64,000 bases of DNA from the IMG/VR virus record IMGVR_UViG_3300032315_001715, positions 124,001 through 188,000 of that record; one strand, 5' to 3'. How positions within the stretch are numbered: the first letter of the stretch is position 1; every line of letters begins with the position of its first letter. The notes beneath the pieces are model-generated. The model ran no database searches. It worked only from the letters and a program-made list of their open reading frames with translations, and was not told where the DNA came from. The position numbers and the translations under genes are program-made. This document shows positions 41,243-55,200 of the stretch, piece after piece.

Positions 41243-42658
41243 TTAGCCAGCTATCAGTTGTCTGAGCCGATTTACCCTATCTTGGTCTTCGGCAGAAAGT
41301 GTTGGCCTAATCGTTCGGCCATCGACCGTTACGCTTGTTACTATGTTACCGCCAACGATGTTTCCGGAAATGCGCGATGCTCGGGTTCCCGGAGGTATTA
41401 GCCCGGCTGCAACAGCAGCTTCATTAAGCAGCTCGACCTGCCGGCGCGTTTCGGCACTCCGTTGGGCTATCTGACGATCTATGGATGCACCGAGTCCGGA
41501 ATTTACATTTGATCGCACCGGTGCTACGGGATTGGCAGGCGGTATTGGTTCCGTACCGGTAACATTTCCCAGGGGATCATATGTAGGCCTCATCGGAGTA
41601 CCGGGAACAACCGTCGATGATCTCGGCGGGATAGGCCGTCCTGGTTCCGTACCAGTGACATTTCCCAGGGGATCATAGTTGATGATTGGTGGTCCGAATT
41701 CTGGAACTCCGGCGCCTGCGATTGATCCGTTTGGTAGTGTCGGTGTTACCAACAATGCATTCTCATCGGGTGCTGTACCGGCTGCCCCTCGCTGCTGTGT
41801 GTCCAGAAATGCATTCTCGTCTGGCGCCGTGCCAGCTGCTCCGCGTTGAGATCTAACGGCTGGTTGGGTTGAAAATATGCGAGGTTGGGGCGGTGTTGGT
41901 ATATTTGGGAGAACCCCTGGTATGTCCAATGAATCAATTGGTTGCCATCCAAATACTGTCGAATCCACAACCGGTTGACCAAATGCTTCGTATTCAATGG
42001 CCTCGTATTTGAAGCTTATATTAACCTCTTCTGGTTCTTCGCTGGAATAGTCCCGTTGCTGCCAGTCGATGGTTGTTATTTTTGGATTGATGTAGCTAAA
42101 TGCTGTGTAGGTATTGGCATAAAATCCATAAACCGTGATACGATCAAAGAATTGGGTATCGTTGCTAAGGGGTCTCAGGCCCCATCCACTATCGTCGGTA
42201 AATTTTGCATCAACCGGACTTTGGCTGTAGGCATTTTGATTTCTCTTTACTCGGCTATCACCAAAATAAAATGTGAAATAGTCTATCCATGTTGCTAGAA
42301 CCGAATCATCAACTGAATCATACAGTCGTATCGATGCTTCGCCATAATCAATCTTGGTATATATCACCTTTTTCTTGTTATAGTGATTAAGCTCCTGTGT
42401 GGTAAGCGTTATCTTTGGTTTATCAACCTGCTTTACCTTGAAACTTAGGCTTCTATTACCATCATAGCCGTTTAACACCGCATTATTGGTCATGGATTTG
42501 CCGGCCGCCGACAGCTCAAACTTCGTATAAAACATGAACCGCATGCGAGGGACCGCAGTAACCAGTTGACCCGGATTGTTTAATCCAAAAACTCTGGATG
42601 CTATCCTAGGTGATCGAAGCCTTATTTTGCCGTCAGTTTGGGAAAGATTAGCTACCAT
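41243..42658 (-). CDS. Tail-tube-like (gp54/gp48-type) protein with Pro/Gly-rich C-terminal repeats
   Basis: VDKPKI...NHYNKK..IYTKIDY...I.LYD tube-fold pattern; duplicated QRGAAGTAPDENA and YDPLGNVTGTEP; start moved to MVANL. Confidence 0.65.
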   Translation of the reverse strand: MVANLSQTDGKIRLRSPRIASRVFGLNNPGQLVTAVPRMRFMFYTKFELSAAGKSMTNNAVLNGYDGNRSLSFKVKQVDKPKITLTTQELNHYNKKKVIYTKIDYGEASIRLYDSVDDSVLATWIDYFTFYFGDSRVKRNQNAYSQSPVDAKFTDDSGWGLRPLSNDTQFFDRITVYGFYANTYTAFSYINPKITTIDWQQRDYSSEEPEEVNISFKYEAIEYEAFGQPVVDSTVFGWQPIDSLDIPGVLPNIPTPPQPRIFSTQPAVRSQRGAAGTAPDENAFLDTQQRGAAGTAPDENALLVTPTLPNGSIAGAGVPEFGPPIINYDPLGNVTGTEPGRPIPPRSSTVVPGTPMRPTYDPLGNVTGTEPIPPANPVAPVRSNVNSGLGASIDRQIAQRSAETRRQVELLNEAAVAAGLIPPGTRASRISGNIVGGNIVTSVTVDGRTIRPTLSAEDQDRVNRLRQLIAG

Positions 42659-42676
42659 ATAGATATTTATCATGGT

Positions 42677-42704
42677 AAGGGCGGTGTAAAAATACACCGC
42701 CCTT
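42677..42704. other. 12-bp perfect hairpin without a U tract downstream of the tail tube gene
   Basis: aagggcggtgta-aaaa-tacaccgccctt. Confidence 0.6.
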
Positions 42705-42748
42705 GCTATACACACACCAAATTTTTATTAAGTCTAATGAAATACTAA

Positions 42749-43363
42749 TTAGCCATTAACAAAAAGAGGAACAGCCAATTCATTACCTTGAGTTGCGTTG
42801 TCGTAGCGAATTGTCAAAGTAATCATTGTCGGGTCAGAGCTAGAATAATCCATTTGATCATACTGTACCTGCTCAAGGAAGCAGCCCTCGAGGAACCATT
42901 CTTCAATAACGTTGGCAGGATATGCCATGGTACCATCGAGAGTTTGCATCAAGCATCCAAACTTGTAATTAACATGGGAACGAGCAGCACTCTGGCTAAA
43001 ATGATTCATCTGCTTTTGCAGTTGAGCGCTCACCAACCCAGAAACGCTATTGGTAATGTCGTCACGAAGGGCTATCTCAACGGTCTGCCATTCTGGCTTG
43101 TTAGCATAGTATGCAATGTTGTTGTAGCTGTGCAAGGCGGTATTGTTGTGCTGTAGCTGTGGTCGACCAGCTGTAGCAACCTGTTTGGTAAAATCGATCG
43201 GATTAATACCAGTTTGGCCAAAGCCCAACATCTGAACCCTGAACCGATGCTTTAGTTTTGGCATCAAGATCCCGCCTGTTAGGCCGGCCGAGTTACTAGG
43301 TACCCCGAATCGATTTAAGGTTCCGGTTTGCGTTATCGGATTTTGATTTGGAATGAGTGACAT
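42749..43363 (-). CDS. gp19: Tail tube protein (gp19-like)
   Basis: MPKLKHRFRV, YANKPEWQTV.I.LRDD, W.LEGCF...Y...DYSSSD...I.LTIRYD; TAAATA at 43394-43399. Confidence 0.85.
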   Translation of the reverse strand: MSLIPNQNPITQTGTLNRFGVPSNSAGLTGGILMPKLKHRFRVQMLGFGQTGINPIDFTKQVATAGRPQLQHNNTALHSYNNIAYYANKPEWQTVEIALRDDITNSVSGLVSAQLQKQMNHFSQSAARSHVNYKFGCLMQTLDGTMAYPANVIEEWFLEGCFLEQVQYDQMDYSSSDPTMITLTIRYDNATQGNELAVPLFVNG

Positions 43364-43417: not shown

Positions 43418-44017
43418 TCACCGGCTGCTTGACAGGTCTGGATCGCAAGTGAGGGCAACAGGGTTCCCATTAGACTTCATCAATCGATCCCAGGTGGTTG
43501 CATGGCACAGATCGAGGATTATGTGTGTTCGTATTTCATTGCCGTTGTTCACCGCGCTGTGCTGCGTTCGATTATTGATCTCGTAGATATGCCCGGGTTC
43601 TAGATGCTGGGAAAAATCCCTCCATAGTTGCAGGCATTTTTCATTGGTTTTTACCGGAACATGTATCCTATGGCAGTGCTCGTGGAACCATGCTGGATCT
43701 CGATGCCATCCCAGCTGAACCCCTGGCATCAATGTAGCAACTTCCCCTCGTAAAAACACATGGTTGTCAAACATGGATATCACTTGATCGCATACCGGTT
43801 TGCACAATTCAAGCAGGGTTCGTTGATCATCGGTAAGGTGATAATCTCTCGACTTGATCGGAAACGGAAACACCACCAACTTTCCGTCCTTTAATGGCGG
43901 TTCGTGTCTAGCATATTCCTCTTGTATCCAGTTCATCATGTTGCATTGATGAGCAATCGGTTCTATAATTGATATGTCAATCGTTGTTAGGTGCTTAACA
44001 AAGCCATCAAAATCCAT
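43418..44017 (-). CDS. AspH/LpxO-like 2OG-Fe(II) hydroxylase
   Basis: LMPG..LGWHRD...RIHVPV.TN...EINN...HSAVN.G...RTHIILD. Confidence 0.8.
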   Translation of the reverse strand: MDFDGFVKHLTTIDISIIEPIAHQCNMMNWIQEEYARHEPPLKDGKLVVFPFPIKSRDYHLTDDQRTLLELCKPVCDQVISMFDNHVFLRGEVATLMPGVQLGWHRDPAWFHEHCHRIHVPVKTNEKCLQLWRDFSQHLEPGHIYEINNRTQHSAVNNGNEIRTHIILDLCHATTWDRLMKSNGNPVALTCDPDLSSSR

Positions 44018-44654
44018 GGAAATCTCCGATCAAAACTTCTCAAGTATATATGAATGCGAACAGATAGCAAGTGATAACATCACACAATCAACATGGAATG
44101 ATTTGGTACGATTTGTAGAATTACAAACGTCTAAGTCTCCCAACCATGTTGCATTGTCGAACATGACCAACGAAGCACCGGCAGGTTTGCTGCATAATAT
44201 CGCGTCGAAAGCACGATGGACCAGCGACGTCGGAGAAATCGCACTGTTGCGGGCAAATGGTCAAATCATTGGGATCAGCTGCGTTGAATTCAGCGAGCTG
44301 CATTGCCAGCTTTCAGTCGGCGGAGCTAGATGTTGGCTGGATGATCAACATCGATCAAAACAGCTGATGAGCAGATATCTGTTAGACGCTAATCTGCGAT
44401 GGAGCCAAAATCGCCAATTATCAGGCATGCTGCTGACCTTTAACCATTACAATAAATGGATATATAATGGCATCAATCGAGCTGCTAATGGAAAAGCCGT
44501 TGGCATTGGATCGGTTTGGAGCAATTGGTGGGACGATTGCAAACCATTACCAAATCCAATAACCGTAAGATACACCAAACAATGGTGTGTGATCAAACCG
44601 CTAGCTAACCACGGACTAGACAACATCATCCAGGAGATTTTGAATTCCCAATGA
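44016..44654 (+). CDS. Putative GNAT-fold acyltransferase (alternative start 43974)
   Basis: LL..NGQIIGIS...RCWL...HRSKQL resembles GNAT motif A. Confidence 0.45.
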   Translation: MEISDQNFSSIYECEQIASDNITQSTWNDLVRFVELQTSKSPNHVALSNMTNEAPAGLLHNIASKARWTSDVGEIALLRANGQIIGISCVEFSELHCQLSVGGARCWLDDQHRSKQLMSRYLLDANLRWSQNRQLSGMLLTFNHYNKWIYNGINRAANGKAVGIGSVWSNWWDDCKPLPNPITVRYTKQWCVIKPLANHGLDNIIQEILNSQ

Positions 44655-45595
44655 CTGATCTGTATTCAAAATTTGAACTATCAAAAAATAACCATATTCG
44701 ATATTGGTTTAATAACGATTGTAATCAAATATATAGGAATCTCGCCAATGAAAGCTCGCACATGAGCCTCGGCGGCGCCATTAGCAAGACAACCGTTTCA
44801 TTTCTAGACTCATTAATGAATTCTGCCCGAGAAATTGGTGGAAAACATCATGGTGAGTTCCATCTGTTTCTCAGTGGCGGTCTTGACAGCGAGTTAGCAT
44901 TTCGATCATTCATTAGAGCCGGTGTTAGATTTCGTCCAGTGATTGTAAAATTTTCAAATAATCTCAACATCGAGGATGTTGTTGGTGCGATTACATTGTG
45001 TGCAACAGCTAACAAGGATCCTATCATTGTTGATTTTGATCCACTTGAGTTTTTTCTATCTGAAGATTGGAAGCGGATTGCTGTTAGCTACCAAGCACAC
45101 ACGTTTTATCAACAACTATTGATAAAGATCGCTGAGAATCTAGCCGCACCAATGATAACCATCGATGAGATTGAGATCAGCCGGGGTGACAGGGGTATTT
45201 GGAAATTCGTAAAGAAGGAGGACCAAGACGGTTGTTGGCATCGATTCGTCGAAAAAACCGGAATTCCGGCATACAATAATTTCTACACATACGATCCTCG
45301 TACCATCATCGCATTCATGTCTAGCCGTCGAATCAAATCTCTAATCAACAACGATGTTCACGGAAAGCTATCTTGGAACAGCAGCAAAAATGAGGTATAT
45401 TTCGAGTTGACAAGATTAAATATGGCCAAAAGACACAAGCGCCATGGCATGGAAAGAATGATGCATATCTGGGAATACGTTGAGAACGCAACATGTTTAT
45501 TAATGCCCGGCAGCCCGAGGACGTTTGAATATTCGGCCATACCTCTCCAAGCCAATCTACGAACCATGGAAGAGATGACATGCAATACCATATAA
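44651..45595 (+). CDS. PP-loop ATP pyrophosphatase, asparagine-synthetase-like, without glutaminase domain
   Basis: HLFLSGGLDSE. Confidence 0.7.
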   Translation: MTDLYSKFELSKNNHIRYWFNNDCNQIYRNLANESSHMSLGGAISKTTVSFLDSLMNSAREIGGKHHGEFHLFLSGGLDSELAFRSFIRAGVRFRPVIVKFSNNLNIEDVVGAITLCATANKDPIIVDFDPLEFFLSEDWKRIAVSYQAHTFYQQLLIKIAENLAAPMITIDEIEISRGDRGIWKFVKKEDQDGCWHRFVEKTGIPAYNNFYTYDPRTIIAFMSSRRIKSLINNDVHGKLSWNSSKNEVYFELTRLNMAKRHKRHGMERMMHIWEYVENATCLLMPGSPRTFEYSAIPLQANLRTMEEMTCNTI

Positions 45596-46152
45596 GATGG
45601 ATCACCCACAACGATGCCAATAATGTTATGGCATTGTCTAAACACATATATGAAACCGACAAGGAATCATATCCCACCAATCTCAACGTATCCAACCCAA
45701 ACATTCTATCTGCATTTTTCGTATCAGAAGACATCACCGGATCATATAATCGCCGCGCTATTGGAATCTTCGACAACAACCAACGCCTTGTTGCTGCTAC
45801 CGGTACCAGGAAGATGGATTTCATACCGGTCTGGGTCCTAAGCTGGACACTGAGCAGCATTAAAACCGCACAGTTTGGATCCATCTGGCAAAAACAGCTT
45901 GGAATGCTTACGGACGATTTTGAAAGTCGAGGTATTAACGAATTTTACGTGGTAAGCCCTGCTAGCAGGGAGCTTGCTTACAAGAAAATGATGAGATTCA
46001 TGAGAAAACGCTACTGGACCTTCGCCGAGCTTAACATCAGTGCTGGTACCAAGCCTTCCCACGGATTGCATTGGATTATCATGGGAAATCAACTGTATTC
46101 GTATGATATAAACATTCGACGATATATCTTAAAAAGGGGGGACAATGATTAA
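45580..46152 (+). CDS. Putative GNAT-like protein
   Basis: AIGIFD..QRLVAATG beta-hairpin and alpha/beta pattern; weak call. Confidence 0.35.
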   Translation: MQYHIRWITHNDANNVMALSKHIYETDKESYPTNLNVSNPNILSAFFVSEDITGSYNRRAIGIFDNNQRLVAATGTRKMDFIPVWVLSWTLSSIKTAQFGSIWQKQLGMLTDDFESRGINEFYVVSPASRELAYKKMMRFMRKRYWTFAELNISAGTKPSHGLHWIIMGNQLYSYDINIRRYILKRGDND

Positions 46153-47011
46153 CTGGATCAAATACACATGGCAAACATATAAGGTTACCGGGCAGATCCC
46201 ATACATTATTTCAATTTGGTTGCCTTTTCATCTTCTTTTAGTAGCTGGTATTGTTTTAGCCATCACAGCGTGGTCGTGGACTTATCTGGTGTATTTTGTA
46301 ATCGGATGGACCATTTTTGGTGGTCTCGGCACGGCAGTGATGCTGCATCGCCACGTGTCCCATCGTTCGATCGTCGTTAGAACCTGGATGAAACCAGGCT
46401 TATATTGGATCGGATGCTTGGCTGCACAGGGATCACCAATTTGGTGGGCCGCGTTGCATCGAGGCTACCATCACGCACATTCTGATAAAGACAAGGACAT
46501 ACACAGCCCAATCAATGGGTTCTGGCATGCATACATGGGCTGGATGTTTGGAATCAAACACGATTCAGTTAACCTCAAATACGGAGTCGAGCTGCTGAGA
46601 GATAAGCAGTTAATATGGTTCCATAAGAACTACAACATGGTGGTATGGGGATCAATTGTCGTGATGGCACTGATAGACCCTATGTTTTGTCTGTGGTTTT
46701 ATATCATACCAGCTATGGTTGGTTTACATACTGATAGCCTTGTAAACAGCGTGTGTCACACCATGGGTGCCGGATATCGACCGTTCGACACCAAGGATCG
46801 TAGCCAAAATGTTTGGTATCTCGGATATCTAGGCTGGGGCCAAGGTTGGCACAATAATCATCATTCTGATCCAAGAAGCTATGACTTTGGTACCACCGTT
46901 AGCAAAAAATGGTGGGAATTTGATCCGTGCATGTTATGGGTTCCAATCATATCGCCCTGGGCAGAAACTAAGAAAATTTGGGCACAATGGAGGAATTCAT
47001 GCGCTGGATAG
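46145..47011 (+). CDS. Membrane fatty-acid (delta-9-type) desaturase
   Basis: His boxes HRHVSH, HRGYHH, HNNHH; transmembrane segments; HSD.DKD.HSP. Confidence 0.9.
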   Translation: MINWIKYTWQTYKVTGQIPYIISIWLPFHLLLVAGIVLAITAWSWTYLVYFVIGWTIFGGLGTAVMLHRHVSHRSIVVRTWMKPGLYWIGCLAAQGSPIWWAALHRGYHHAHSDKDKDIHSPINGFWHAYMGWMFGIKHDSVNLKYGVELLRDKQLIWFHKNYNMVVWGSIVVMALIDPMFCLWFYIIPAMVGLHTDSLVNSVCHTMGAGYRPFDTKDRSQNVWYLGYLGWGQGWHNNHHSDPRSYDFGTTVSKKWWEFDPCMLWVPIISPWAETKKIWAQWRNSCAG

Positions 47012-47628
47012 CAATAGGAGCTACCGTTGAAAACGTTGTAATTGCTGCACACGACGAAATAACACTGCTAGAAACCATAGCCGAGCATGATTTCGACGTC
47101 ATCGTAAAGATATATGGATTGTCTGATGGTGAGTATAACGAAATCAAATCAGGCAACTATGAGTATCGAATTCGATTCAATAATCTAAGAAGCGTTTATC
47201 TTGAACGCATTGGTCGCAGCGAGGAAACCAAACAGCTATCTAGAATTTATACCAAACGAATACAACAAATGGTTGCAATGCGGGGTCGATACGAACATGC
47301 GTTCAACAAACACCGAGCGTTGCTGAGCCAGCAGTATGAAATTTATGAATCCAAGGCCATGGAAGCCAAGGACATCATCAACAACCAGAATAGCGCATTT
47401 TTTCTCGATGGGTATGTTAAGGATTATGCCGAGGAAGCCAACATGGATGTGTTGGCAGCAGCAACACTGATCTGGGCCAAATACACCAACTGGCACGAAT
47501 ATCTTCGAAAGATCGAGCGACTTCGCCTGCGGCATTTCAATGCACTCAAGACCGCCAAGACTGATGAGGATTTCCTTGCGCTTGCTGCCCAGGTCGACAA
47601 AGACTTCTTTATTAACATGCTGATGTAA
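46999..47628 (+). CDS. Hypothetical protein with a tail-fibre-assembly-like helical C-terminus
   Basis: QQYEIY..K..EA...A.....A..I..K...W.....IE..R pattern; SD GGAGG sets the start at 46999. Confidence 0.4.
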   Translation: MRWIAIGATVENVVIAAHDEITLLETIAEHDFDVIVKIYGLSDGEYNEIKSGNYEYRIRFNNLRSVYLERIGRSEETKQLSRIYTKRIQQMVAMRGRYEHAFNKHRALLSQQYEIYESKAMEAKDIINNQNSAFFLDGYVKDYAEEANMDVLAAATLIWAKYTNWHEYLRKIERLRLRHFNALKTAKTDEDFLALAAQVDKDFFINMLM

Positions 47629-47638
47629 AGGAACGGCC

Positions 47639-48718
47639 ATGGAATTAGTTTATTACACCCCTAACAAGCTGTATTCTTATCAAGATATTCGAAGGATTGA
47701 TCCGATGCAGGTGTCGTTTTCACAGATGTTTAATCCAAGCATCAGCTTGATGGATCGAACAGGATCAATTAATTGTCCACCTGTGTCGGTTAAGATCCTA
47801 GATAGTTTCCCGGAATGGACATCGCCGCCAAGCTTCGAGGAACTATGTTACTCGAGGTATGATTCGATATTGCAGCAAGCATTATCCTCCAACAAGACCG
47901 TGGTGATCTTCTATTCCGGTGGGATCGACAGCACGCTGATAGCGGCATTAGCAATCGCACATCCGGATTTCCATCGCCATCGAAATAATCTGCTGTTGGC
48001 GTTTAGCGAGGAAAGCATCAAAGAAAATCCAAAATTTTGGTATGACCGATTGTTGCCAGCGTTTGGGCATCGGATCATAAATTCAAACGGATATCATACG
48101 CATATATCTGACCCAAACAATGTATGCATCACCGGTGAATTTGCTGACAACATTTTTGGTAGCCTAACGGTTAAAAGCTACATGGATGTTAGTGGCGACT
48201 TTGATGCTATACAAAAGCCTTTTGCAGATACTGGAAGATTTTGGCTCTTAAAGAAAATCACCAGTCCTGCTGATCGAGATCGATGTGGTGATATGATGGA
48301 CAAGATCTTCGCAACCAGTCCCAGACCAATGGTGTCAAATCATGATTGCCTGTGGTGGTTGAATTTTGTGCTAAAGTGGCAAGCTGTTAAATTCAGGCTA
48401 GCTAGCCATGCACCTACACCCGATATGGTTGATCTCATGGCTAAAAATGTGGTCCATTTTTTTGAAACCAAGGAGTTTCAAAACTGGGCGGTGATGACCG
48501 ATGAACCAAAGGTTGAAAAGGATTGGTACAGCTATAAGCTGCCAGCAAAGAAGCTAATACATTCAATCAATGGCGACGATTATTATCTACGCTGGAAGAC
48601 CAAGTATCCTAGCATACCCGGATTGACCAGGTATGCTAATACACACGATTTCATATATTGGGACGAACCCAATGATCGATATGTTGCATCAAAGGATTAT
48701 CTATTACCTCTGAAGTGA
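47639..48718 (+). CDS. Second PP-loop asparagine-synthetase-like protein, without glutaminase domain
   Basis: VIFYSGGIDST and ITGEFADNIFG (AsnB-like SGEGADELFG). Confidence 0.75.
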   Translation: MELVYYTPNKLYSYQDIRRIDPMQVSFSQMFNPSISLMDRTGSINCPPVSVKILDSFPEWTSPPSFEELCYSRYDSILQQALSSNKTVVIFYSGGIDSTLIAALAIAHPDFHRHRNNLLLAFSEESIKENPKFWYDRLLPAFGHRIINSNGYHTHISDPNNVCITGEFADNIFGSLTVKSYMDVSGDFDAIQKPFADTGRFWLLKKITSPADRDRCGDMMDKIFATSPRPMVSNHDCLWWLNFVLKWQAVKFRLASHAPTPDMVDLMAKNVVHFFETKEFQNWAVMTDEPKVEKDWYSYKLPAKKLIHSINGDDYYLRWKTKYPSIPGLTRYANTHDFIYWDEPNDRYVASKDYLLPLK

Positions 48719-49446
48719 TCGTAAAGGCCGGTTCGATTTAAAAAGTCATCTGAGAACACGCCGTCGATCCTTAGGCTCCAATTGGCAAACTGGCAGGGTT
48801 CTGAACCGTGCCAGTTTGCGTTATCAAAATATATCACCCGAGAATCGGTATAGTGTTTGGTACCGTCGTTATCTAACACGAAGAATCGCTTGAGGGAGTT
48901 CAAGGTTAACCATATGAATTCGTTTCGATGGCTTCGAGGATTGGGATAATCCCGATGTGTTACGGTTTTAACGCCCGGTTCGTTGATGAACATCACCACA
49001 CGACCGTATTCGTTAAATACATTTTGGGAATCAATCCATTCAAATAGAAATTTGAAATCATTGGTAACGGGGGTATCAATGCAACTATCGTGCAGATGTT
49101 TCGTGCTGTAATGGTCCTGTTTCATCACACGGATATACATCGCTTGGTTCAAGCTAACCACCGGATGCATGTATTTGCAATAGGTGTAAAATCTACCAAG
49201 GCTTCCCAGCTTCGTGGCAATCTGTCTTGCATCTGAGGTTGGATCCCCTACCAAACCTTTTGCAAAGTCACCAAGCTCAATTTGTGTTTGATCATATAGA
49301 TTTGCTTGCACACCAACCAAACTGGTATAAATTTGTTCAGGATATTTGGCAATGGCATATGCAAACGCAGATTGGTGCTGTTCAAGCGCAGAAATATCTA
49401 TGTGGGTTGATAGATCAACCCACGGTTGATCGTTGACAAGATGCAT
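48697..49446 (-). CDS. Putative 2OG-Fe(II) oxygenase
   Basis: THRD ... NWHG ... SLRIDG; start moved to MHLV by SD GGAGAG. Confidence 0.6.
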   Translation of the reverse strand: MHLVNDQPWVDLSTHIDISALEQHQSAFAYAIAKYPEQIYTSLVGVQANLYDQTQIELGDFAKGLVGDPTSDARQIATKLGSLGRFYTYCKYMHPVVSLNQAMYIRVMKQDHYSTKHLHDSCIDTPVTNDFKFLFEWIDSQNVFNEYGRVVMFINEPGVKTVTHRDYPNPRSHRNEFIWLTLNSLKRFFVLDNDGTKHYTDSRVIYFDNANWHGSEPCQFANWSLRIDGVFSDDFLNRTGLYDHFRGNR

Positions 49447-49529
49447 GTTACTCTCCGAAATTGATGTTGACTTTTGGCATGTCTGCCTACATCGTTTATA
49501 ATTAAATACATACAGATAAGTCAAACCAG

Positions 49530-50555
49530 ATGTCATTAATCATTGATCCACGTAGTTATCATCAACAAGAAGACCACACACAATGGCCTTCTAGATTCCC
49601 AGCATGGTTGACTACAACGCAGGATTTATCCCCCGGAAGCTATGTGGTTCCTGATCACGATCACTCGATAGTCATGTTGGGAGGAGAACAACCTCGATGC
49701 ATGGCCAACGTCTGTACTCACAAACGATCCGTCATTCTCAAGGGAAGGGGACAGATCGGATCGGTGATGACCTGCCCGATACATAAATGGACATGGAGCT
49801 TAACCGGAAAGCTACGCGGCGCTAGGGGTTTTGAAAAAAGCTGCGAAATGGATCTCGAGGAACACCCGATACACACATGGCAAAGCCATATTTTTGGCGG
49901 AAATCAAAGCTGGCAAGAGGACATTGGATCTCTTGGCGATCTTGCCAAATGGTTGGATATACAGGACTATCAGTGGCATAGCGGATCAAGATTAAGCTAC
50001 GCATTTGATTGGAAGATTTTCATGGAAATCTTCCTAGATCTCTACCATGTTGCACCGTATCATCCTGGACTTCGAAGCTTAACCGATTGCAACACATTTG
50101 ATTGGATATTTGGCAAGCATTGGAGCTGTCAAACCGCTAAGTTTAACAGGGATTGGCCAAATGAGCTTGGTTATAGGGAGTTGTATAAGCTTTATCAGAA
50201 ATCAGGTCACTACGATTCGGCGATATATGGTGCGGTATGGTTGGGAATCTATCCAAACATCATGATCGAATACTATCCGGGATCAATCGTTGTTAGTACG
50301 GTATGGCCTGACGGACAAGGTAAGTGCGTTAACCATCTTGATTTTTATTATGAAACGTGGTTGTTGGAAAAATTTCCAGAGTTTCCTGCGGTATTCCAAA
50401 ATACGTTCATGACAACCGCCGACGAGGATGAAGAAATCGGGCTTAGGATGCAAGAAGGGTTATCATTGACCAAGACCCCATTTAAATCAATGAACCACAA
50501 GATTGAGGAAGCTGGGTATCAGCATTTCCATCAATGGTTACAAACGTATCTTTAG
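49530..50555 (+). CDS. Rieske non-heme iron oxygenase alpha subunit (choline monooxygenase/CntA-like)
   Basis: NVCTHK...CPIHKW Rieske ligands; WKIFMEIFLDLYHV..YH mononuclear iron motif; TAAATA at 49503-49508. Confidence 0.88.
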   Translation: MSLIIDPRSYHQQEDHTQWPSRFPAWLTTTQDLSPGSYVVPDHDHSIVMLGGEQPRCMANVCTHKRSVILKGRGQIGSVMTCPIHKWTWSLTGKLRGARGFEKSCEMDLEEHPIHTWQSHIFGGNQSWQEDIGSLGDLAKWLDIQDYQWHSGSRLSYAFDWKIFMEIFLDLYHVAPYHPGLRSLTDCNTFDWIFGKHWSCQTAKFNRDWPNELGYRELYKLYQKSGHYDSAIYGAVWLGIYPNIMIEYYPGSIVVSTVWPDGQGKCVNHLDFYYETWLLEKFPEFPAVFQNTFMTTADEDEEIGLRMQEGLSLTKTPFKSMNHKIEEAGYQHFHQWLQTYL

Positions 50556-51097
50556 ATAGAGCAAGCTACCAAATGTATTCGAGGTGTCCATCCGCCGTTG
50601 AAAACAAAGTGCTCTTTGGCGGTATGGACCCTGTACCAGTGACCATCAGATGGTAAATGATAACATATTGATCTTATTGAACTTTTTTCAAAGCATTCGC
50701 CAAATATTGCATTAAGGTTAGTGTCGATCGCTAGGTGATATCTATATCCGTCGTCCTTATGCATCGTTAGTCCGGTCTTGGGCATTAGTCGCATGAATCT
50801 AACCCTGCCCCATTTTACCCCAAGTGTCGATGAGAGATTTTTCAGTACACCCCTGGTATAATCAGGACATTGATCGTTCCATTGATCAAAATCAGATTCA
50901 ACGGCTAAGGTCTTTTTGGCAACGGTATCATATATCCACCCAGTGCAGTCTTTCCATTGGTCTGATGCATTAATTCGATGCCTAAGCCCAATTTGATTAT
51001 TTGATTCCCACGATGTCATTGACAACATCCGTTGAAGATCAGAACGAATCTGATCAAGATCAACGGTACCTTCTATTTTTTTGATAAAATCACTCAT
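50552..51097 (-). CDS. AspH-like 2OG-Fe(II) hydroxylase
   Basis: RFMRLMP...MHKD...YHLAIDTN...HFVFNGG..PRIHLV. Confidence 0.75.
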   Translation of the reverse strand: MSDFIKKIEGTVDLDQIRSDLQRMLSMTSWESNNQIGLRHRINASDQWKDCTGWIYDTVAKKTLAVESDFDQWNDQCPDYTRGVLKNLSSTLGVKWGRVRFMRLMPKTGLTMHKDDGYRYHLAIDTNLNAIFGECFEKSSIRSICYHLPSDGHWYRVHTAKEHFVFNGGWTPRIHLVACSI

Positions 51098-51677
51098 GAT
51101 TCTTTCTACCTATGATCATGTATCTAGAAAAATTCCACGTCGGATAATTGAAATCAAGCTGGCCTTTATACATCATCGGGGATAGACCATAGTTTGAGAC
51201 AAATGATTCTAGATCATCATAGCAATCATGATGATCGTCATGCGGCATGTTATTGCTTTGCAATACCATCATGGTACCAGACGGTATGCGATCATACCAA
51301 TCCCTGGAATGAAAATGTTCGGTGCTGGTATTAATCACGATATCCGGTGGTGGTCCATATTCTCCGCTGATTGGATCTATGGAATTACAGTCTCGGGTAA
51401 ATGCCTTGAATTTCCAACCTTGCCATATCCAATTTTCCATCAGGCTATCAGCTGTTGATTCACAGCTCGGATCAACATCAAAGCTCCTGATGTGTGATAT
51501 TGGCATGATCTGCCTTGCTAGCAACAGCATTCCGGTCATAGCGTGCCATCCACCGTATAACCAAATTATCTGCGGGCGATCGTACTGCATCCGTTCCAAT
51601 TGAGAACAAAGCCATAACTTGCTTGATATCTGGCCGCTGCTAAAAGCATCCCTACTGACAAGAAACTGATCAGCCAT
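51090..51677 (-). CDS. Class I SAM-dependent methyltransferase-like protein
   Basis: LYGGWHA, IRSFDVDP, DIVINTSTEH. Confidence 0.6.
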   Translation of the reverse strand: MADQFLVSRDAFSSGQISSKLWLCSQLERMQYDRPQIIWLYGGWHAMTGMLLLARQIMPISHIRSFDVDPSCESTADSLMENWIWQGWKFKAFTRDCNSIDPISGEYGPPPDIVINTSTEHFHSRDWYDRIPSGTMMVLQSNNMPHDDHHDCYDDLESFVSNYGLSPMMYKGQLDFNYPTWNFSRYMIIGRKNHE

Positions 51678-51966
51678 GACCGACCTGGCCGTACGTATTA
51701 TAGCTCACTTTTTCAATTGTCGACGAGAAGCTCTTTTCGAATATTGTCTGGGCTACCCGGAGATACTCGTTGCGATATTTTTCGGGTATCTGTCCAATGA
51801 TCAGCCCTAAATTTGTAGCAACCGCAGATACAACAACACCAATGGACTGATCCGGTGGGATCGTTTCGATCATCTGCTGATATAACTCTGATATGTATTC
51901 ATACATATCCTCATTTATCGCGAGTTGGATATCCGTAATGTCACTATGATCGTCGTTAGTTGCCAT
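51670..51966 (-). CDS. Small hypothetical protein
   Basis: 98 aa, overlapping the next gene. Confidence 0.5.
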   Translation of the reverse strand: MATNDDHSDITDIQLAINEDMYEYISELYQQMIETIPPDQSIGVVVSAVATNLGLIIGQIPEKYRNEYLRVAQTIFEKSFSSTIEKVSYNTYGQVGHG

Positions 51967-51969
51967 TGT

Positions 51970-52173
51970 CTATTGCTTCTTCTTTTTGTAACGAGTTAGC
52001 AAGGCTGATATAGTTTCAGCATTTCCTTGCTCTTCAGGGTGATTCTGTAATAACCATTCTTCAACTTCCATGCAGGTACGTTGATTTGTTGCTACCAGTC
52101 GAAGCATTTGGATCGCTTCTTCAAGTCGTAATTCTAAGATTTGTATTTTGCTTTCAGGAGACTTCTTAACCAT
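51970..52173 (-). CDS. Small hypothetical protein
   Basis: 67 aa, tight packing. Confidence 0.5.
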   Translation of the reverse strand: MVKKSPESKIQILELRLEEAIQMLRLVATNQRTCMEVEEWLLQNHPEEQGNAETISALLTRYKKKKQ

Positions 52174-52244: not shown

Positions 52245-55200
52245 TTACGCAGAACCTCCTGGTAGAGGATCGCCAGTATTGAGTATCCTGATCGGGATAT
52301 AGATGAACTCAATCGCCTTTTCTGGCTTGATCGCAATATCAATCCACAGCTCGTTCCTGTCAATTCTTTCAGCGGTGTTGTTGCTGTCGTCGCAAACCAC
52401 GGCAAAGTCGTACACTGCCCGCAGAGTTTGCAGGTTGCGCATGAAGGAATTAAACGTAGCAACGACGTTCTGGCGCGTTTGCTGATCGTTAGGCTCAAAG
52501 AGGAACGGTTTTGCAAGTATATCTAGGTTGTATTTGAGATAGTTAATCAGCCGTACAACGTTGATTCGATCCAGTGCCGTGGGCACCGGGCTTAGGGTCT
52601 TCTGACCATATACCACAAGTCCTCGACCTGGAATGAACGCGATCGGATTGATCTTGTTGGCGTAGAGAACATCGCGCTGGCCTTGATTCAACCGGACCAC
52701 GCTGTATTCTTCCTCGGCATTGAGATATCCAACGCTTGCTACACCGGTAACCAATCCTCGGTTGAATCCTGCCGGAGCAAACCACGGATATGCAACCTGA
52801 TCGCTGTATGCTATGGTACGAAGGGCCATCATCGCCGCCGGTACCATTACTTCATTACCGTTGAGATCCGTTCCAAGACCCCAAGGATAGTAAAGGGCTG
52901 CATACGGAGTGCTGCTGGTTAGTCCATCTGGACCATTGCTTGCTGCACCGTTCTGATTGTTAGCCCATTCCGTGAACGCGGTGCCAGTTGGTTCTAGCGT
53001 TGCAGGTGTGTCAGCTACGATAAACGCAACTTCCTTCTTGTCAACATTTAGGGTGATCATTTCATCCAAGCATTCAACATATCCGGGGGTTGAAATGAGG
53101 TTGAAATAGGTTTCTTCGGCACGTGCTTCCTCGTTACCACTAATCGCACCCTGCAACCCGCGCACGATGACAGCCCTCTGTGCTGCATCGCCCATGTACG
53201 GTGCACCGTTGAGCTGATTGCCACTTTCGGTAACCCAACGGTCACGATAAGAATATGTCGTCGGTAGGTAGTTCTTTCGGAACACCTTGACGTTGTTGGT
53301 GCTGTAACGGGTATTAAACAACATCATACCGGCTGGATACAACATTGCATCTGGGCAATCTGGATCAACATAATCGCTGGTAACCATATCACTTTCAATT
53401 TGGCTGCCAGTTGCGGTGCCGTTAGCATTTGGACGTGCATCGGCAAACACGATCCCCTTGCTGGTGGTTCGATCGGTGTTATCGACCAACACCCAGCTTG
53501 CATCCATGCTGCTGTATCGATAGATTGCCGGATATGTCGATACGTTGGTATCAATCCAGATATCGTAATCAACCAATGCACCAAGAGTGCTTTGCTCAAG
53601 AGGAGCCTCGCTTGACAATATCGGTCCGTTTGGATCAGTTGCTGGATATGCATTCCTATAGCCAAGCCACTGTGTTCCGTTATTGACCATGATATCGGCA
53701 CGCAACGTTGTATTGTACCAAAGTGTGCCATCAACCGGAGTACCGCTCGGAGCAGACGCTGATGGAGTATAATCTAGGTCAACCCACGAAGTTCCATCCC
53801 ATTCCTTGATGACATGCGATGCTTCGGCCGGAGATGTGTTGTCGCTGTTATACAGCACAAACACGCTGCCGATTTGCTTGAGACTACCAAATGCAACATC
53901 AGCTGCCGACGTCGACGAATACATGGGAACCGTACCGGTGTTCGGCCTAATGTTTAGGGACCGCCATGCAGCTCCGGTATAGGTCTTAACCGAGTAGTTT
54001 GCACCTTGGTTTCCCGGCGTGGTGTTGATCCACACATTGGTAGCAGCGATGCTGGATAGATCAGACGGTACAGTTAACCCTGGTGAATAACCCTGGTAAA
54101 CCAGCGAACGACCAAAGGTTACACCTGCAGCAATTCCGGCTCCTGCCAATGGGCTTTCCCTGATATCCTCAAGGATAAAACTGGTGCCATTGGTGTTGGT
54201 AAGTTTCAGCATGTTGTCGGTGGTCTTGCTTGCTACGATCGGACCGTTAGGGAATCCAACCGTATTGATTTCTGCAATCAATCCATCCAAGGTATTGTTA
54301 GGAAGGGCCGGAACGTGGATTATCACCGGGCCGCTGCCTGCGTCAATGCTGAAACTCACGCTCTGCAACCAGTCATCTATAAGATTAAACGTTGCGCCGA
54401 CTCCACCACCGGTGACCGACACCGGATTAGTTGGGTATATCGTATAGCTACCAGGAGTGGTAACAGTTACAGTGTTTACACCCCATACCAAGTCAACCGT
54501 TGCACTATCTCCGCCGCCGGAGGTCGAAGTTGCTGATACGTTTGTGGTAGGAGCAACAGCACCGGTATATTGACCAGCCTGGACAATGCTCAGCCCGGTA
54601 ATACCGTTCGATCCATCAATGCTGTCAACCTTCAATATCACCGGTGTTGCAAATCCAGCTCCGCTAAAGGTCAGCGTGTCATTAACATCGTATCCGCTAC
54701 CTGGGACGTTTGGAGTGCCTCCGACGACCTTAATGCTAGCGACTGTCAATACCGTTGCCGTGCTAAAGGTACCTCCAGCAACCGTCAACGCATCACTAAC
54801 CGCGTATCCGCTGCCAGCTGCTACCGAGGTAGCGCTTGCGGTCTTCAGCGTTGCTGCGGTAAACGTTGGATTGCTAACGGTGCCGGTTACGCTGGCCCAA
54901 TAGGTGTTGGTAGGAAGTATTCCTGCATTCCTCCACGGTGTTCCGACGCCATACTGATCACTGAGATCATTAACGATGATGTCGGTCGAATCATAGTTGG
55001 TTATGCGTAGATATTTTTGGCTACCAACGGTGTACACAGATGCCACGGCATTAACACTGGCCGTGTTAAGTGCAGTGTTGATTGCACCGACAAATCCAGT
55101 CAGCGTGCCACCAGATGGTACCGTAATCGTTGCTGTGCTCACTGCACCGATCGTGATCTTGCACTGAGTGCCGGCGGTAAATGTTGGATTTGCAACGGTT

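What the first reader, a model, noticed from the sequence alone, without database searches (positions are those of the whole stretch)
44651..48718. Two glutaminase-less asparagine-synthetase-like ligases in one operon
Seen: SGGLDS (314 aa) and SGGIDS plus TGEFADNIFG (359 aa), both too short to hold the Ntn glutaminase domain. Known: AsnB-fold enzymes without a working glutaminase domain (beta-lactam synthetase, lasso cyclase) adenylate a carboxylate and couple it to a non-ammonia amine. Inference: these perform two sequential amide or lactam-forming steps on an unknown substrate. The first ligase is flanked on both sides by GNAT-like genes. No precursor peptide was seen in the window.
Basis: partly seen in the sequence, partly recalled or inferred. 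Interest (0 to 1): 0.65.

Follow-up and report, generated by a model that had tools for sequence, protein, structure and literature searches.

The report
Two short AsnB-like ligases in phage cassette
A 453-kb T4-like jumbo phage carries two asparagine-synthetase-like ATP-dependent ligases that lack the glutamine-splitting domain; they sit in a gene cassette, conserved in hundreds of uncultured phages, with a membrane lipid desaturase, iron/2-oxoglutarate hydroxylases and probable acyltransferases, and the cassette's product is unknown.

Summary
ORFs 44651-45595 (314 aa, SGGLDS) and 47639-48718 (359 aa, SGGIDS, TGEFADNIFG) give confident models (pLDDT 93-94). Their five best structural matches are all AsnB-type synthetase domains (Z 10-15), above generic PP-loop enzymes (Z 8.8 or less). 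Neither has room for an Ntn glutaminase domain, and the whole genome encodes none.

The window is part of a 452.8-kb T4-like phage, and the genes lie in an island between the tail-tube and tail-sheath genes. They belong to a cassette found in 249 IMG/VR contigs:
- an unknown Rossmann-like protein
- Fe/2OG cupins
- a GNAT-like protein, the 314-aa ligase and a second GNAT-like protein
- an SCD1-type delta-9 desaturase
- a helical 216-aa protein and the 359-aa ligase

Relatives of the 314-aa ligase occur fused to true GNAT domains. The 359-aa ligase and its helical partner also occur in CPR and Bdellovibrionales MAGs, next to solute transporters and acyl-handling enzymes. No lasso or RiPP partner genes exist.

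Most likely these are two carboxylate-adenylating amide ligases in a small-molecule pathway, possibly one that makes an amino-lipid. The substrate is inferred, not shown. I rate it a new variant of a known kind, of moderate to high interest.

The parts
43418..44017 (-). 199-aa Fe(II)/2OG cupin of the AspH/LpxO family (here called cupin199). Present only in the closest relatives.
   Evidence: Pfam PF05118 Asp_Arg_Hydrox, E 1e-7, 32.4 bits against a cut-off of 22.6. tblastn finds relatives in 10 of 81 loci.
43974..44654 (+). 226-aa protein (u226), possibly GNAT-like. The true start is probably Met15, at about 44016.
   Evidence: Family A3 is conserved in 27 of 38 full-flank loci. Evidence for GNAT is weak: best PDB hit a GNAT at E 0.36, and Atlas neighbour clusters with Acetyltransf_1 in 15% of members. 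The Atlas holds the sequence from residue 15 on.
44651..45595 (+). 314-aa glutaminase-less AsnB-type PP-loop ligase (PP314), with SGGLDS at residues 75-80.
   Evidence: Model pLDDT 92.8. VIA matches: ASNS Z 15.0, AsnB 14.9, beta-LS 13.9, CarA 13.1, TsnB9 10.3, against 8.8 or less for other PP-loop enzymes. The family has 1655 cluster representatives at E<=1e-3. GNAT fusions occur.
45580..46152 (+). 190-aa protein (u190), possibly GNAT-like. Its ORF overlaps both neighbouring ORFs, suggesting translational coupling.
   Evidence: Family A4/A8 is present in 31 of 38 full-flank loci. The top Atlas neighbour cluster has Acetyltransf_1 in 20% of members, and DUF1999 also appears. No Pfam or PDB hit.
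46145..47011 (+). 288-aa membrane di-iron desaturase of the SCD1/DesC (delta-9) type (FAD288).
   Evidence: Pfam PF00487, E 2.4e-14, 54.2 bits against a cut-off of 29.7. phmmer to mouse and human SCD1 (4ymk, 4zyo), E 1e-15, with the HRxxSHR, HRxxHH and HNNHH boxes aligned. Present in 33 of 38 full-flank loci.
46978..47628 (+). 216-aa helical protein (u216), the constant partner of the 359-aa ligase. The likely start is at about 46999.
   Evidence: Adjacent to the PP359 gene in 36 of 38 full-flank phage loci and in most CPR and Bdellovibrionales loci. No family or PDB hit. Homologue alignments begin at MRWIA.
47639..48718 (+). 359-aa glutaminase-less AsnB-type PP-loop ligase (PP359), with SGGIDS at 93-98 and TGEFADNIFG at 165-174.
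   Evidence: Model pLDDT 93.6. VIA matches: TsnB9 Z 13.0, beta-LS 11.4, ASNS 10.9, CarA 10.0, AsnB 8.7, against 8.1 or less for others. Pfam Asn_synthase scores 20.7 bits against a cut-off of 21. The motif matches E. coli AsnB SGEGSDEVFGG. 249 relatives in IMG/VR.
48697..49536 (-). 279-aa protein (u279) with a 2-His-1-carboxylate motif, a probable Fe/2OG dioxygenase.
   Evidence: Family A9 has invariant H194, D196, H243 and R256. It is present next to the ligase gene in 26-27 loci. No Pfam hit.
49530..50555 (+). 341-aa Rieske non-haem iron oxygenase alpha subunit of the CntA/GbcA/Stc2 type. Present only in the closest relatives.
   Evidence: Pfam Ring_hydroxyl_A E 1e-27 and Rieske E 9e-10. Nearest solved structure is carnitine monooxygenase CntA, E 1.6e-11. 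Found in 4 loci only.
50552..51097 (-). 181-aa Fe(II)/2OG cupin (u181) of the AspH/LpxO type.
   Evidence: Family A6 has invariant H113, D115, H163 and R173. The L001 homologue passes Pfam PF05118, 24.9 bits against a cut-off of 22.6. Present in 31 of 38 loci.
51090..51677 (-). 195-aa protein (u195). It corresponds to the C-terminal half of a protein of about 390 aa in most other phages. It has a GGWxG...DxD...EH pattern; its fold was not established.
   Evidence: Family A7. Present in 33 of 38 loci. It is also adjacent to the GNAT::PP314 fusion in L088. No Pfam or PDB hit.

Best explanation
The two proteins are catalytically competent AsnB-type adenylating ligases that lost the glutaminase domain. 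Each would bind ATP through its PP-loop, turn a substrate carboxylate into an acyl-adenylate with release of PPi, and pass the acyl group to a nitrogen nucleophile that enters directly. That nucleophile would be a substrate amine or free ammonia.

They are parts of a mobile metabolic cassette carried by large aquatic myoviruses. The 314-aa ligase works with GNAT-type acyltransferases, an AspH/LpxO-type Fe/2OG hydroxylase and the u195 protein. The 359-aa ligase works with a dedicated helical 216-aa partner. An SCD1-type membrane delta-9 desaturase links the two blocks.

The most likely product is a small, N-acylated, hydroxylated, amide-linked molecule made in the infected cell. The most plausible candidate is an amino-acid-containing (amino)lipid or another amphiphile whose head-group carboxylate is amidated.

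Shown: fold, motifs, absence of a glutaminase domain, cassette conservation, GNAT fusions.
Inferred: catalytic activity, small-molecule or lipid substrate, shared pathway.
For: Fold and motifs:
- The five top structural matches of each model are AsnB-family synthetase domains, clearly above other PP-loop enzymes.
- The nearest non-viral ESM Atlas clusters are Asn_synthase families, TM 0.55-0.58.
- The PP-loop and the second acidic motif are invariant in both families. PP359 matches the E. coli AsnB SGEGSDEVFGG motif.

No glutaminase: the complete genome has no class II GATase domain.

Cassette:
- In 38 IMG/VR loci with full flanks, u216 occurs in 36, PP314 in 33, the desaturase in 33, u195 in 33, u181 in 31 and u190 in 31. 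PP359 identity across these loci ranges from 100% down to 27%.
- Genes that neighbour the cassette in other phages (Thy1, family F7) lie elsewhere in this genome, which defines the core.

Rosetta-stone fusions: P0227, P0254 and P0270 carry GNAT N-terminal to a PP314 domain, and P0323 carries it C-terminal. In L088 the fusion sits between u195-like and u181-like genes.

Lipid link:
- The desaturase aligns to SCD1 with all His boxes. Viral delta-9 lipid desaturases are experimentally known (PMC5776448).
- PF05118 is the LpxO/OlsC/OlsD family of lipid acyl hydroxylases (PMC12971839).
- A PF04116 FA_hydroxylase gene neighbours the cassette in 46 loci.

Small-molecule link: cellular relatives sit beside SSF and TRAP solute transporters, AMP-binding ligases, an amidase, a GDSL hydrolase, an SDR and a BKACE enzyme.
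Against: - No biochemical data exist for any family member.
- Neither ligase reaches a curated family threshold.
- The GNAT assignment of u226 and u190 is statistically unsupported.
- u216 and u195 have no assigned fold, and the complex prediction gave no verdict.
- The desaturase could be an independent membrane-fluidity gene that is merely syntenic.
- The two ligases occur apart in some lineages, so they need not share a substrate.
- The cellular contexts are heterogeneous MAG neighbourhoods, and some of them may be prophage or mis-binned DNA.
- The cassette has no carrier protein, acyl-ACP enzyme or exporter.
Confidence: 0.4

Rival explanations
1. Both enzymes are plain ammonia-dependent amidotransferases. 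They adenylate a common metabolite carboxylate (for example Asp to Asn, or another acid to its amide) and use free NH3, serving as an auxiliary nitrogen-metabolism function for the phage.
For: The isolated AsnB synthetase domain is known to use NH3 (established knowledge of AsnB). No glutaminase domain is encoded in cis or elsewhere. PP359 relatives occur in CPR bacteria and Bdellovibrionales, which scavenge metabolites. NH3-dependent NAD/NMN synthetases are the best PDB sequence hits of PP314 (3fiu, E 7.8e-6).
Against: Two very divergent ligases, a dedicated helical partner, GNAT fusions and tight linkage to hydroxylases and a desaturase are not needed for simple Asn synthesis. Outside the ATP-binding motifs there is no detectable sequence similarity to AsnB.
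Confidence: 0.15
2. The cassette modifies a macromolecule: a tRNA or DNA base, or a protein such as a virion or translation component. The PP-loop enzymes would adenylate a base or side-chain position, as TilS, QueC or Dph6 do. GNAT, cupin and methyltransferase-like partners would add further groups.
For: PP-loop enzymes, GNATs and cupin/JmjC hydroxylases all occur in tRNA and protein modification pathways (established knowledge). In this lineage the cassette lies between tail genes, and it lies beside tail or baseplate genes in Cygsa01. Thy1 is an internal neighbour in the major clade. Jumbo phages with aaRS genes carry PP314::GNAT fusions.
Against: The structural matches are to AsnB-type carboxylate ligases, not to TilS, QueC, MnmA or ThiI (Z 8.2 or less). 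Thy1 is unlinked in this genome. A membrane acyl desaturase and solute transporters in cellular contexts fit small molecules better. No nucleic-acid-binding domain was detected.
Confidence: 0.15
3. They are intramolecular cyclases of the lasso-peptide, beta-lactam or carbapenam type, forming a macrolactam or lactam.
For: Beta-lactam synthetase and carbapenam synthetase are among the top structural matches.
Against: The whole genome has no lasso B protease (PF13471) or PqqD RRE. No conserved small ORF belongs to the core cassette. The N-terminal domain that lasso cyclases, beta-LS and CarA retain is missing. ASNS and AsnB score as high or higher.
Confidence: 0.04
4. The two ligases belong to two independent functional modules that merely travel together. 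Module A is u195, cupin, GNAT and PP314. Module B is u216 and PP359. They act on different substrates.
For: Within the 8-kb flanks of L088, module A is present but no PP359 or u216. Module B occurs alone or duplicated in distant phages, CPR and Bdellovibrionales. The two blocks are inverted relative to each other between clades.
Against: They co-occur in 33 of 38 full-flank loci over a wide divergence range. In this phage they lie in one tightly packed co-directional block. Bdellovibrionales and some CPR loci also carry PP314-like genes near PP359.
Confidence: 0.25

Closest known systems
Asparagine synthetase B / human ASNS (class II glutamine amidotransferase, Pfam PF00733)
   Same: Same synthetase-domain fold (Z 15.0 and 14.9 for PP314; 10.9 and 8.7 for PP359). 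SGGxDS PP-loop present. PP359 keeps the (S/T)GExxDxxFG motif.
   Different: No N-terminal Ntn glutaminase domain and no ammonia tunnel partner. About 10-15% identity. Below the Pfam and NCBIfam thresholds. PP314 has a degenerate second motif (TIDEIE). The genomic context is a multi-enzyme cassette, not amino-acid biosynthesis.
TsnB9 hydroxyamidotransferase, beta-lactam synthetase, carbapenam synthetase (AsnB-family enzymes that adenylate non-Asp carboxylates)
   Same: Among the top structural matches (TsnB9 Z 13.0 for PP359; beta-LS Z 13.9 and CarA Z 13.1 for PP314). They are precedents for AsnB-fold enzymes that activate other carboxylates and use other nucleophiles.
   Different: Those enzymes keep a full N-terminal domain, active or vestigial, and sit in actinomycete or enterobacterial natural-product clusters. 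The proteins here have only about 50-65 N-terminal residues and are phage-borne.
Aerobactin-type (iucABCD) logic: two amide ligases, a GNAT-type acyltransferase and a hydroxylase
   Same: Same pathway logic of hydroxylation, N-acylation and two ATP-dependent amide-bond formations on a small molecule. This is a comparison from my own knowledge, not a test.
   Different: The enzyme families are unrelated (IucA/IucC NIS synthetases and a flavin N-hydroxylase, against AsnB-type ligases and Fe/2OG cupins). No siderophore transport genes are present.
Ornithine-lipid synthesis and modification (OlsB, OlsC/OlsD, OlsE, OlsG, orphan ATP-dependent taurine transferase)
   Same: The cassette and its neighbours contain LpxO/OlsC-family Fe/2OG oxygenases, di-iron membrane enzymes, possible acyltransferases and ATP-dependent carboxylate-amine ligases. 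The review PMC12971839 states that the ATP-dependent enzyme adding taurine to the ornithine-lipid carboxyl is still unidentified.
   Different: No OlsB, OlsA or OlsF homologue was detected by Pfam. The desaturase is SCD-type, not OlsE-type. The link rests on family-level analogy only.
Cyanophage delta-9 lipid desaturases (vFAD; PMC5776448)
   Same: A phage-encoded PF00487 desaturase with delta-9-type His boxes. It is a precedent for phages remodelling host membrane lipids.
   Different: This genome has no psbA. The desaturase here is embedded in a multi-gene cassette; in a term search of that paper I found no mention of neighbouring genes.

Membership tests
PP-loop ATP pyrophosphatase superfamily | SGGxDS PP-loop at the end of the first beta strand of a Rossmann-like alpha/beta domain | tested here: met
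   SGGLDS (residues 75-80) and SGGIDS (93-98) are invariant in alignments A2 and A1. The fold matches all PP-loop families.
Asparagine synthetase B family (PF00733 / TIGR01536) | C-terminal synthetase-domain fold | tested here: met
   The top 5 structural hits of both models are AsnB-family enzymes, Z 8.7-15.0 with 209-271 aligned residues.
Asparagine synthetase B family (PF00733 / TIGR01536) | N-terminal Ntn glutaminase domain with catalytic Cys | tested here: not met
   Only about 50-65 residues precede the PP-loop domain. PF13537 is absent from the whole genome.
Asparagine synthetase B family (PF00733 / TIGR01536) | Curated family score threshold | tested here: not met
   PP359 scores 20.7 bits against a cut-off of 21 in Pfam, and 16.3 against 267 in TIGR01536. 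PP314 has no hit. A genome search gave 23.6 bits for the PP359 frame when neighbouring segments were included.
Asparagine synthetase B family (PF00733 / TIGR01536) | SGEGxDExFGG motif (Mg/ATP and catalytic Glu) | tested here: met
   PP359 has TGEFADNIFGS against E. coli AsnB SGEGSDEVFGG, with G166, E167, D170 and G174 invariant. PP314 has only TIDEIE, with T170 and D172 invariant; its equivalence to the AsnB motif is inferred.
Lasso peptide cyclase (C protein) | Co-occurrence with a precursor peptide, a transglutaminase-like B protease and a PqqD-like RRE | tested here: not met
   PF13471 and PF05402 are absent from the 452.8-kb genome. The core cassette has no conserved small ORF.
Beta-lactam / carbapenam synthetase | Retained (inactive) N-terminal domain plus a Tyr/Glu/Lys catalytic set | tested here: not met
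   The N-terminal domain is absent. The catalytic residues could not be mapped because no structure-based residue alignment was available.
tRNA / queuosine PP-loop enzymes (TilS, MnmA, ThiI, QueC, LarE) | Best structural or sequence match to these families | tested here: not met
   Z is 8.8 or less for these families against 10-15 for AsnB-type enzymes. The only sequence hits are sub-threshold PP-loop hits. The 'MnmA' annotation of the Cygsa01 homologues is probably a motif-level call.
GNAT acyltransferases (u226, u190) | Significant match to a GNAT profile or structure | tested here: inconclusive
   No Pfam or PDB hit at E<0.1. hhalign to the GNAT domains of the fusion proteins is not significant. 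Atlas feature neighbours partly carry PF00583. Positional analogy to the GNAT::PP314 fusions. No folding quota was left.
SCD1/DesC-type delta-9 acyl desaturase (FAD288) | PF00487 membership, three His boxes and N-terminal TM helices | tested here: met
   54.2 bits against a cut-off of 29.7. Aligned to SCD1 at E 1e-15 with the His boxes matching. Regiospecificity and substrate cannot be tested here.
AspH/LpxO Fe(II)/2OG oxygenases (cupin199, u181) | PF05118 match and an HxD...H...R triad | tested here: met
   cupin199 scores 32.4 bits against a cut-off of 22.6. The u181 homologue scores 24.9 bits, and H113, D115, H163 and R173 are invariant.

The most novel reading that the evidence does not exclude
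The two ligases are the missing type of enzyme that amidates the head-group carboxylate of amino-acid lipids, as in the ATP-dependent taurine transfer to ornithine lipid whose gene is still unknown (PMC12971839). The phage cassette would then be a complete virus-encoded pathway to build and decorate a phosphorus-free aminolipid in the host membrane during infection. The same ligase and partner pair would be used by lipid-scavenging CPR bacteria and Bdellovibrionales.
Probability: 0.1. Interest if true: 0.85.

Novelty: new variant of a known kind. Interest (0 to 1): 0.6.

Why it matters
AsnB-fold enzymes are known as glutamine-dependent amidotransferases or as rare natural-product ligases. Here two large subfamilies that I found nowhere described consist of the bare synthetase domain. 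One has 1655 cluster representatives at 50% identity.

They sit in a cassette that is widespread in uncultured aquatic myoviruses. One ligase and its partner are shared with CPR bacteria and Bdellovibrionales.

If the cassette makes an amide-linked lipid or metabolite, it would be one of the few multi-step biosynthetic pathways carried by phages. It would add a new way for viruses to remodel host membranes or metabolism. It would also supply candidate genes for orphan ATP-dependent amide-forming activities. Even the minimal result would be useful for annotation, because the only homologues found in an isolate phage (Cygsa01) are currently labelled MnmA.

Tried and rejected
DNA and protein searches against phage isolates:
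- blastn of the island against 50,697 isolate phage genomes gave no match.
- tblastn of PP314 gave none. PP359 hit only Pseudomonas phage Cygsa01.

Family and profile searches:
- Pfam, NCBIfam and PHROGs gave only sub-threshold PP-loop hits for the ligases and nothing for u226, u190, u216, u279, u181 (window copy) and u195.
- PDB profile searches for u226, u190, u216 and u195 were not significant.
- hhalign of u226 against u190, and of each against the GNAT domains of the fusion proteins, was not significant.
- hhalign of A1 and A2 against E. coli AsnB aligned only the PP-loop, so Asp-binding residues could not be mapped.
- A word search with the u190 profile returned 47 relatives, none with a Pfam domain.

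Other attempts:
- Complex prediction for PP359 with u216 gave no verdict (scores 0.00, 0.48, 0.00). This is evidence neither for nor against binding.
- The sigma-70 promoter and terminator scan found fewer sites than in shuffles and was uninformative.
- A genome-contig scan with the PP314 profile found no relative with the two patterns used.
- No psbA was found, so I do not call this a cyanophage.
- My first guess that u195 is a cupin was wrong. Its motifs look Rossmann- or methyltransferase-like, but no search supports any family.
- Literature searches found no description of this cassette.

Not done:
- No alternative genetic code was applied.

Full report
**Setting**

The window is bases 124,001-188,000 of a single 452,799-bp virus record that CheckV rates 100% complete. 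PHROG scans identify T4-like structural and replication genes:
- tail tube, 42749-43363 (-)
- a second tube-like protein, 41243-42715 (-)
- large terminase, 36465-38066 (-)
- gp32-type SSB and a UvsX recombinase
- a 1344-aa tail sheath, 52245-56279 (-)

The finding lies in an 8.3-kb island (43418-51677) inserted between the tube and sheath genes. The genome has no psbA and the window has no tRNA.

**The observation**

Both ORFs are real. The 314-aa protein (PP314) has SGGLDS at residues 75-80. The 359-aa protein (PP359) has SGGIDS at 93-98 and TGEFADNIFG at 165-174. SGG.DS occurs three times in the six-frame translation of the window, against a mean of 0.09 in shuffles.

Curated libraries see only the PP-loop. 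PP359 scores 20.7 bits against Pfam Asn_synthase (cut-off 21), and PP314 has no hit.

Each protein has many uncharacterised relatives: 118 and 86 clusters at 90% identity, nearly all 'hypothetical'. The PP-loop and a second acidic motif are invariant in both family alignments. The two families resemble each other only around the PP-loop.

**Fold**

AlphaFold2 models built on these alignments are confident, with pLDDT 93.6 for PP359 and 92.8 for PP314. I ran an exhaustive structural comparison against 48,161 PDB representatives.

| Match | PP314 Z | PP359 Z |
|---|---|---|
| human ASNS | 15.0 | 10.9 |
| E. coli AsnB | 14.9 | 8.7 |
| beta-lactam synthetase | 13.9 | 11.4 |
| carbapenam synthetase | 13.1 | 10.0 |
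| TsnB9 | 10.3 | 13.0 |
| best other PP-loop enzyme (LarE, NAD/NMN synthetase, TilS, GMP synthetase and others) | 8.8 | 8.1 |

Foldseek gives a similar picture. The ESM Atlas search with the PP359 model finds Asn_synthase clusters as its nearest non-viral neighbours.

Both proteins are therefore AsnB-type synthetase domains. Only 50-65 residues precede the domain, so the Ntn glutaminase domain is absent. No class II GATase domain exists anywhere in the genome. The single class I GATase ORF lies about 90 kb from the island (genome position about 79 kb against 167-176 kb).

PP359's VCITGEFADNIFGSL lines up with E. coli AsnB MVLSGEGSDEVFGGY. PP314 has the looser PMITIDEIEISRG.

**The cassette**

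A scan of IMG/VR found 249 contigs that encode a PP359 relative. I compared the island genes with 79 fetched loci, first by tblastn and then with profile HMMs. In the 38 loci with at least 7 kb on both sides of the PP359 gene, the other genes occur as follows:

| Gene | Loci (of 38) |
|---|---|
| u216 | 36 |
| PP314 | 33 |
| desaturase (FAD288) | 33 |
| u195 | 33 |
| u181 | 31 |
| u190 | 31 |
| u226 | 27 |

PP359 identity across these loci runs from 100% to 27%. The order u195-u181-u226-PP314-u190-desaturase is kept as one block, and u216-PP359 (often followed by u279) as a second. The two blocks are inverted relative to each other between clades.

Genes that lie inside or beside the cassette in the major clade are not all linked here. 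Thy1 and three paralogous proteins of about 320 aa lie elsewhere in this genome, and the PF04116 FA_hydroxylase has no match in it at all. This defines the core cassette. The Rieske gene and cupin199 occur only in the closest relatives.

**The other cassette proteins**

- FAD288 passes Pfam FA_desaturase. It aligns to SCD1 (4ymk, E 1.2e-15) with the HRxxSHR, HRxxHH and HNNHH boxes. Phage delta-9 lipid desaturases have been shown to be active (PMC5776448).
- cupin199 and the u181 family are AspH/LpxO-type Fe/2OG oxygenases, shown by PF05118 hits and invariant HxD...H...R.
- u279 has the same triad by motif only.
- The Rieske oxygenase is closest to carnitine monooxygenase CntA and to Stc2-type demethylases.
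- u195 is the C-terminal half of a protein of about 390 aa in other phages. It has a GGWxG...DxD...EH pattern but no family hit.
- u216 is helical and has no detectable relatives of known function.

**The GNAT question**

u226 and u190 give no significant hit to any GNAT profile or structure. Language-model neighbours include clusters that partly carry Acetyltransf_1 or DUF1999.

Stronger evidence, though indirect, comes from an exhaustive profile search with the PP314 family. It found 1655 cluster representatives at E<=1e-3. Of the ten longer proteins I tested:
- three have a GNAT match N-terminal to the PP314 domain (P0227, E 8e-12, and P0254, E 4e-11, both clearly significant; P0270, E 7.5e-4, just below the Pfam cut-off)
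- one has it C-terminal (P0323)
- two are tandem duplications of the ligase domain

In locus L088 the GNAT::PP314 fusion sits between a u195-like gene (E 8e-46) and a u181-like cupin (E 1e-15). This reproduces the window's sub-module with the acyltransferase fused. The functional link between GNAT and this ligase family is therefore real, even though the fold of the two flanking window proteins remains unproven.

**Distribution outside phages**

PP359 relatives at 28-32% identity occur in MAGs of several groups:
- CPR bacteria, including a complete Kaiserbacteria chromosome
- Bdellovibrionales
- Burkholderiales
- a contig of a Polynucleobacter isolate assembly

A u216 homologue is adjacent in most of these loci. 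PP359 is often duplicated in tandem, and PP314-like genes lie nearby in several.

Neighbouring genes include SSF symporters (4 loci), Cupin_2 proteins (5), AMP-binding ligases (3), an amidase, a GDSL hydrolase, TRAP solute-binding proteins, an SDR, a BKACE enzyme, a B12-radical SAM enzyme, and in two Bdellovibrionales loci the same desaturase family. These point to small carboxylate or acyl substrates rather than nucleic acids. The neighbourhoods are heterogeneous, however, and MAG contigs can contain viral DNA.

Among 50,697 isolate phages, only Pseudomonas phage Cygsa01 has homologues. It carries two tandem copies annotated as MnmA.

**Interpretation**

What is shown:
- two divergent AsnB-type synthetase domains with intact ATP-binding motifs and no glutaminase domain
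- a conserved multi-enzyme cassette
- an obligate PP359-u216 pairing
- a fusion-level link between the PP314 family and GNAT domains

What is inferred:
- Each enzyme adenylates a carboxylate and forms an amide with an amine or with ammonia.
- The pathway acts on a small molecule.
- Three enzyme families known to modify lipid acyl chains or amino-lipid head groups are in or beside the cassette: the SCD-type desaturase, LpxO/OlsC-type oxygenases and, in the major clade, FA_hydroxylase. The product is therefore plausibly an amino-acid-containing lipid or another amphiphile.

A 2026 review notes that ornithine lipids are modified by LpxO-family hydroxylases, a di-iron hydroxylase, an N-methyltransferase and an ATP-dependent taurine transfer to the head-group carboxyl whose gene is unknown (PMC12971839). 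That is the most novel reading my data do not exclude. It rests on analogy only.

**Rivals**

- Simple NH3-dependent amidation fits the missing glutaminase domain but not the cassette.
- Macromolecule modification fits the enzyme types but not the structural matches or the desaturase.
- Lasso or lactam cyclisation is disfavoured, because the partner genes are absent genome-wide and the N-terminal domain is missing.
- The two ligases may serve different substrates, since each sub-module occurs alone in some lineages.

**Verdict**

This is not a member of the AsnB family in the strict sense, because the glutaminase domain and the curated thresholds are not met. It is a new, widespread, phage-centred variant of the AsnB-type adenylating ligase, set in an uncharacterised cassette. 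The substrate remains unknown. I give confidence 0.4 to the small-molecule or lipid amide-ligase model.

Noticed in passing
window 41243-42715 (-): A second, 490-aa tail-tube-like protein lies next to the canonical 204-aa tube protein. Its C-terminal half carries short direct peptide repeats (QRGAAGTAPDENA twice, YDPLGNVTGTEP twice) that are not part of the tube fold.
   Followed up: no
window 52245-56279 (-): The tail sheath protein is unusually long at 1344 aa. The sheath PHROG matches cover only residues from about 750 to 1336, so the N-terminal half is an unexplained extension or insertion.
   Followed up: no
window 27058-29607 (-): An 849-aa DNA helicase also matches 'terminase large subunit' and primase PHROGs over residues from about 144 to 520. 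This could be an inserted element such as an intein, or mixed PHROG families.
   Followed up: no
window 49530-50555 (+): A Rieske oxygenase is closest to carnitine monooxygenase CntA and to Stc2/GbcA-type quaternary-amine demethylases. It is found only in the four closest relatives of this phage and hints at a betaine-like substrate in this lineage.
   Followed up: partly
G000 (whole genome) around 105,536 (-) and 375,610 (-), outside the window: Two further ORFs with SGGxDS PP-loops (LVGVSGGMDSMVLL and GMMLSGGIDSGILL) bring the genome to four PP-loop enzymes. The first motif looks TilS-like by eye.
   Followed up: no
L083 (Pseudomonas phage Cygsa01, PP179332.1) 9007-9915 and 10200-11156: Two tandem PP359-family genes are annotated as tRNA 2-thiouridylase MnmA. 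They lie after baseplate and probable tail-fibre genes. The annotation probably reflects only the PP-loop.
   Followed up: partly
L091 (Kaiserbacteria CP066682.1), L084/L094 (Moranbacteria), L093: In CPR genomes the u216-PP359 pair sits next to a sodium:solute symporter. In two of them it is also near a PQQ-like beta-propeller protein with a phosphoribosyltransferase-like N-terminus. A YcaO, nitroreductase and 64-aa ORF set lies 3-5 kb upstream in the Moranbacteria contig.
   Followed up: partly
P0223, P0266 (661-662 aa): These proteins consist of two or three tandem PP314-like domains. They mirror the tandem gene duplications seen for PP359.
   Followed up: no
window 43974-44017 and 46978-47011: The listed start codons probably overextend two genes. 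u226 most likely starts at Met15 (about 44016), which would place its start back to back with the divergent cupin199 start. u216 most likely starts at about 46999 (MRWIA...).
   Followed up: partly
window 51090-51677 (-), 51670-52173 (-): u195 is only the C-terminal half of the protein of about 390 aa found in most other phages. In this lineage two small ORFs (98 and 67 aa, conserved in 5 loci) occupy the place of the missing N-terminal half.
   Followed up: partly
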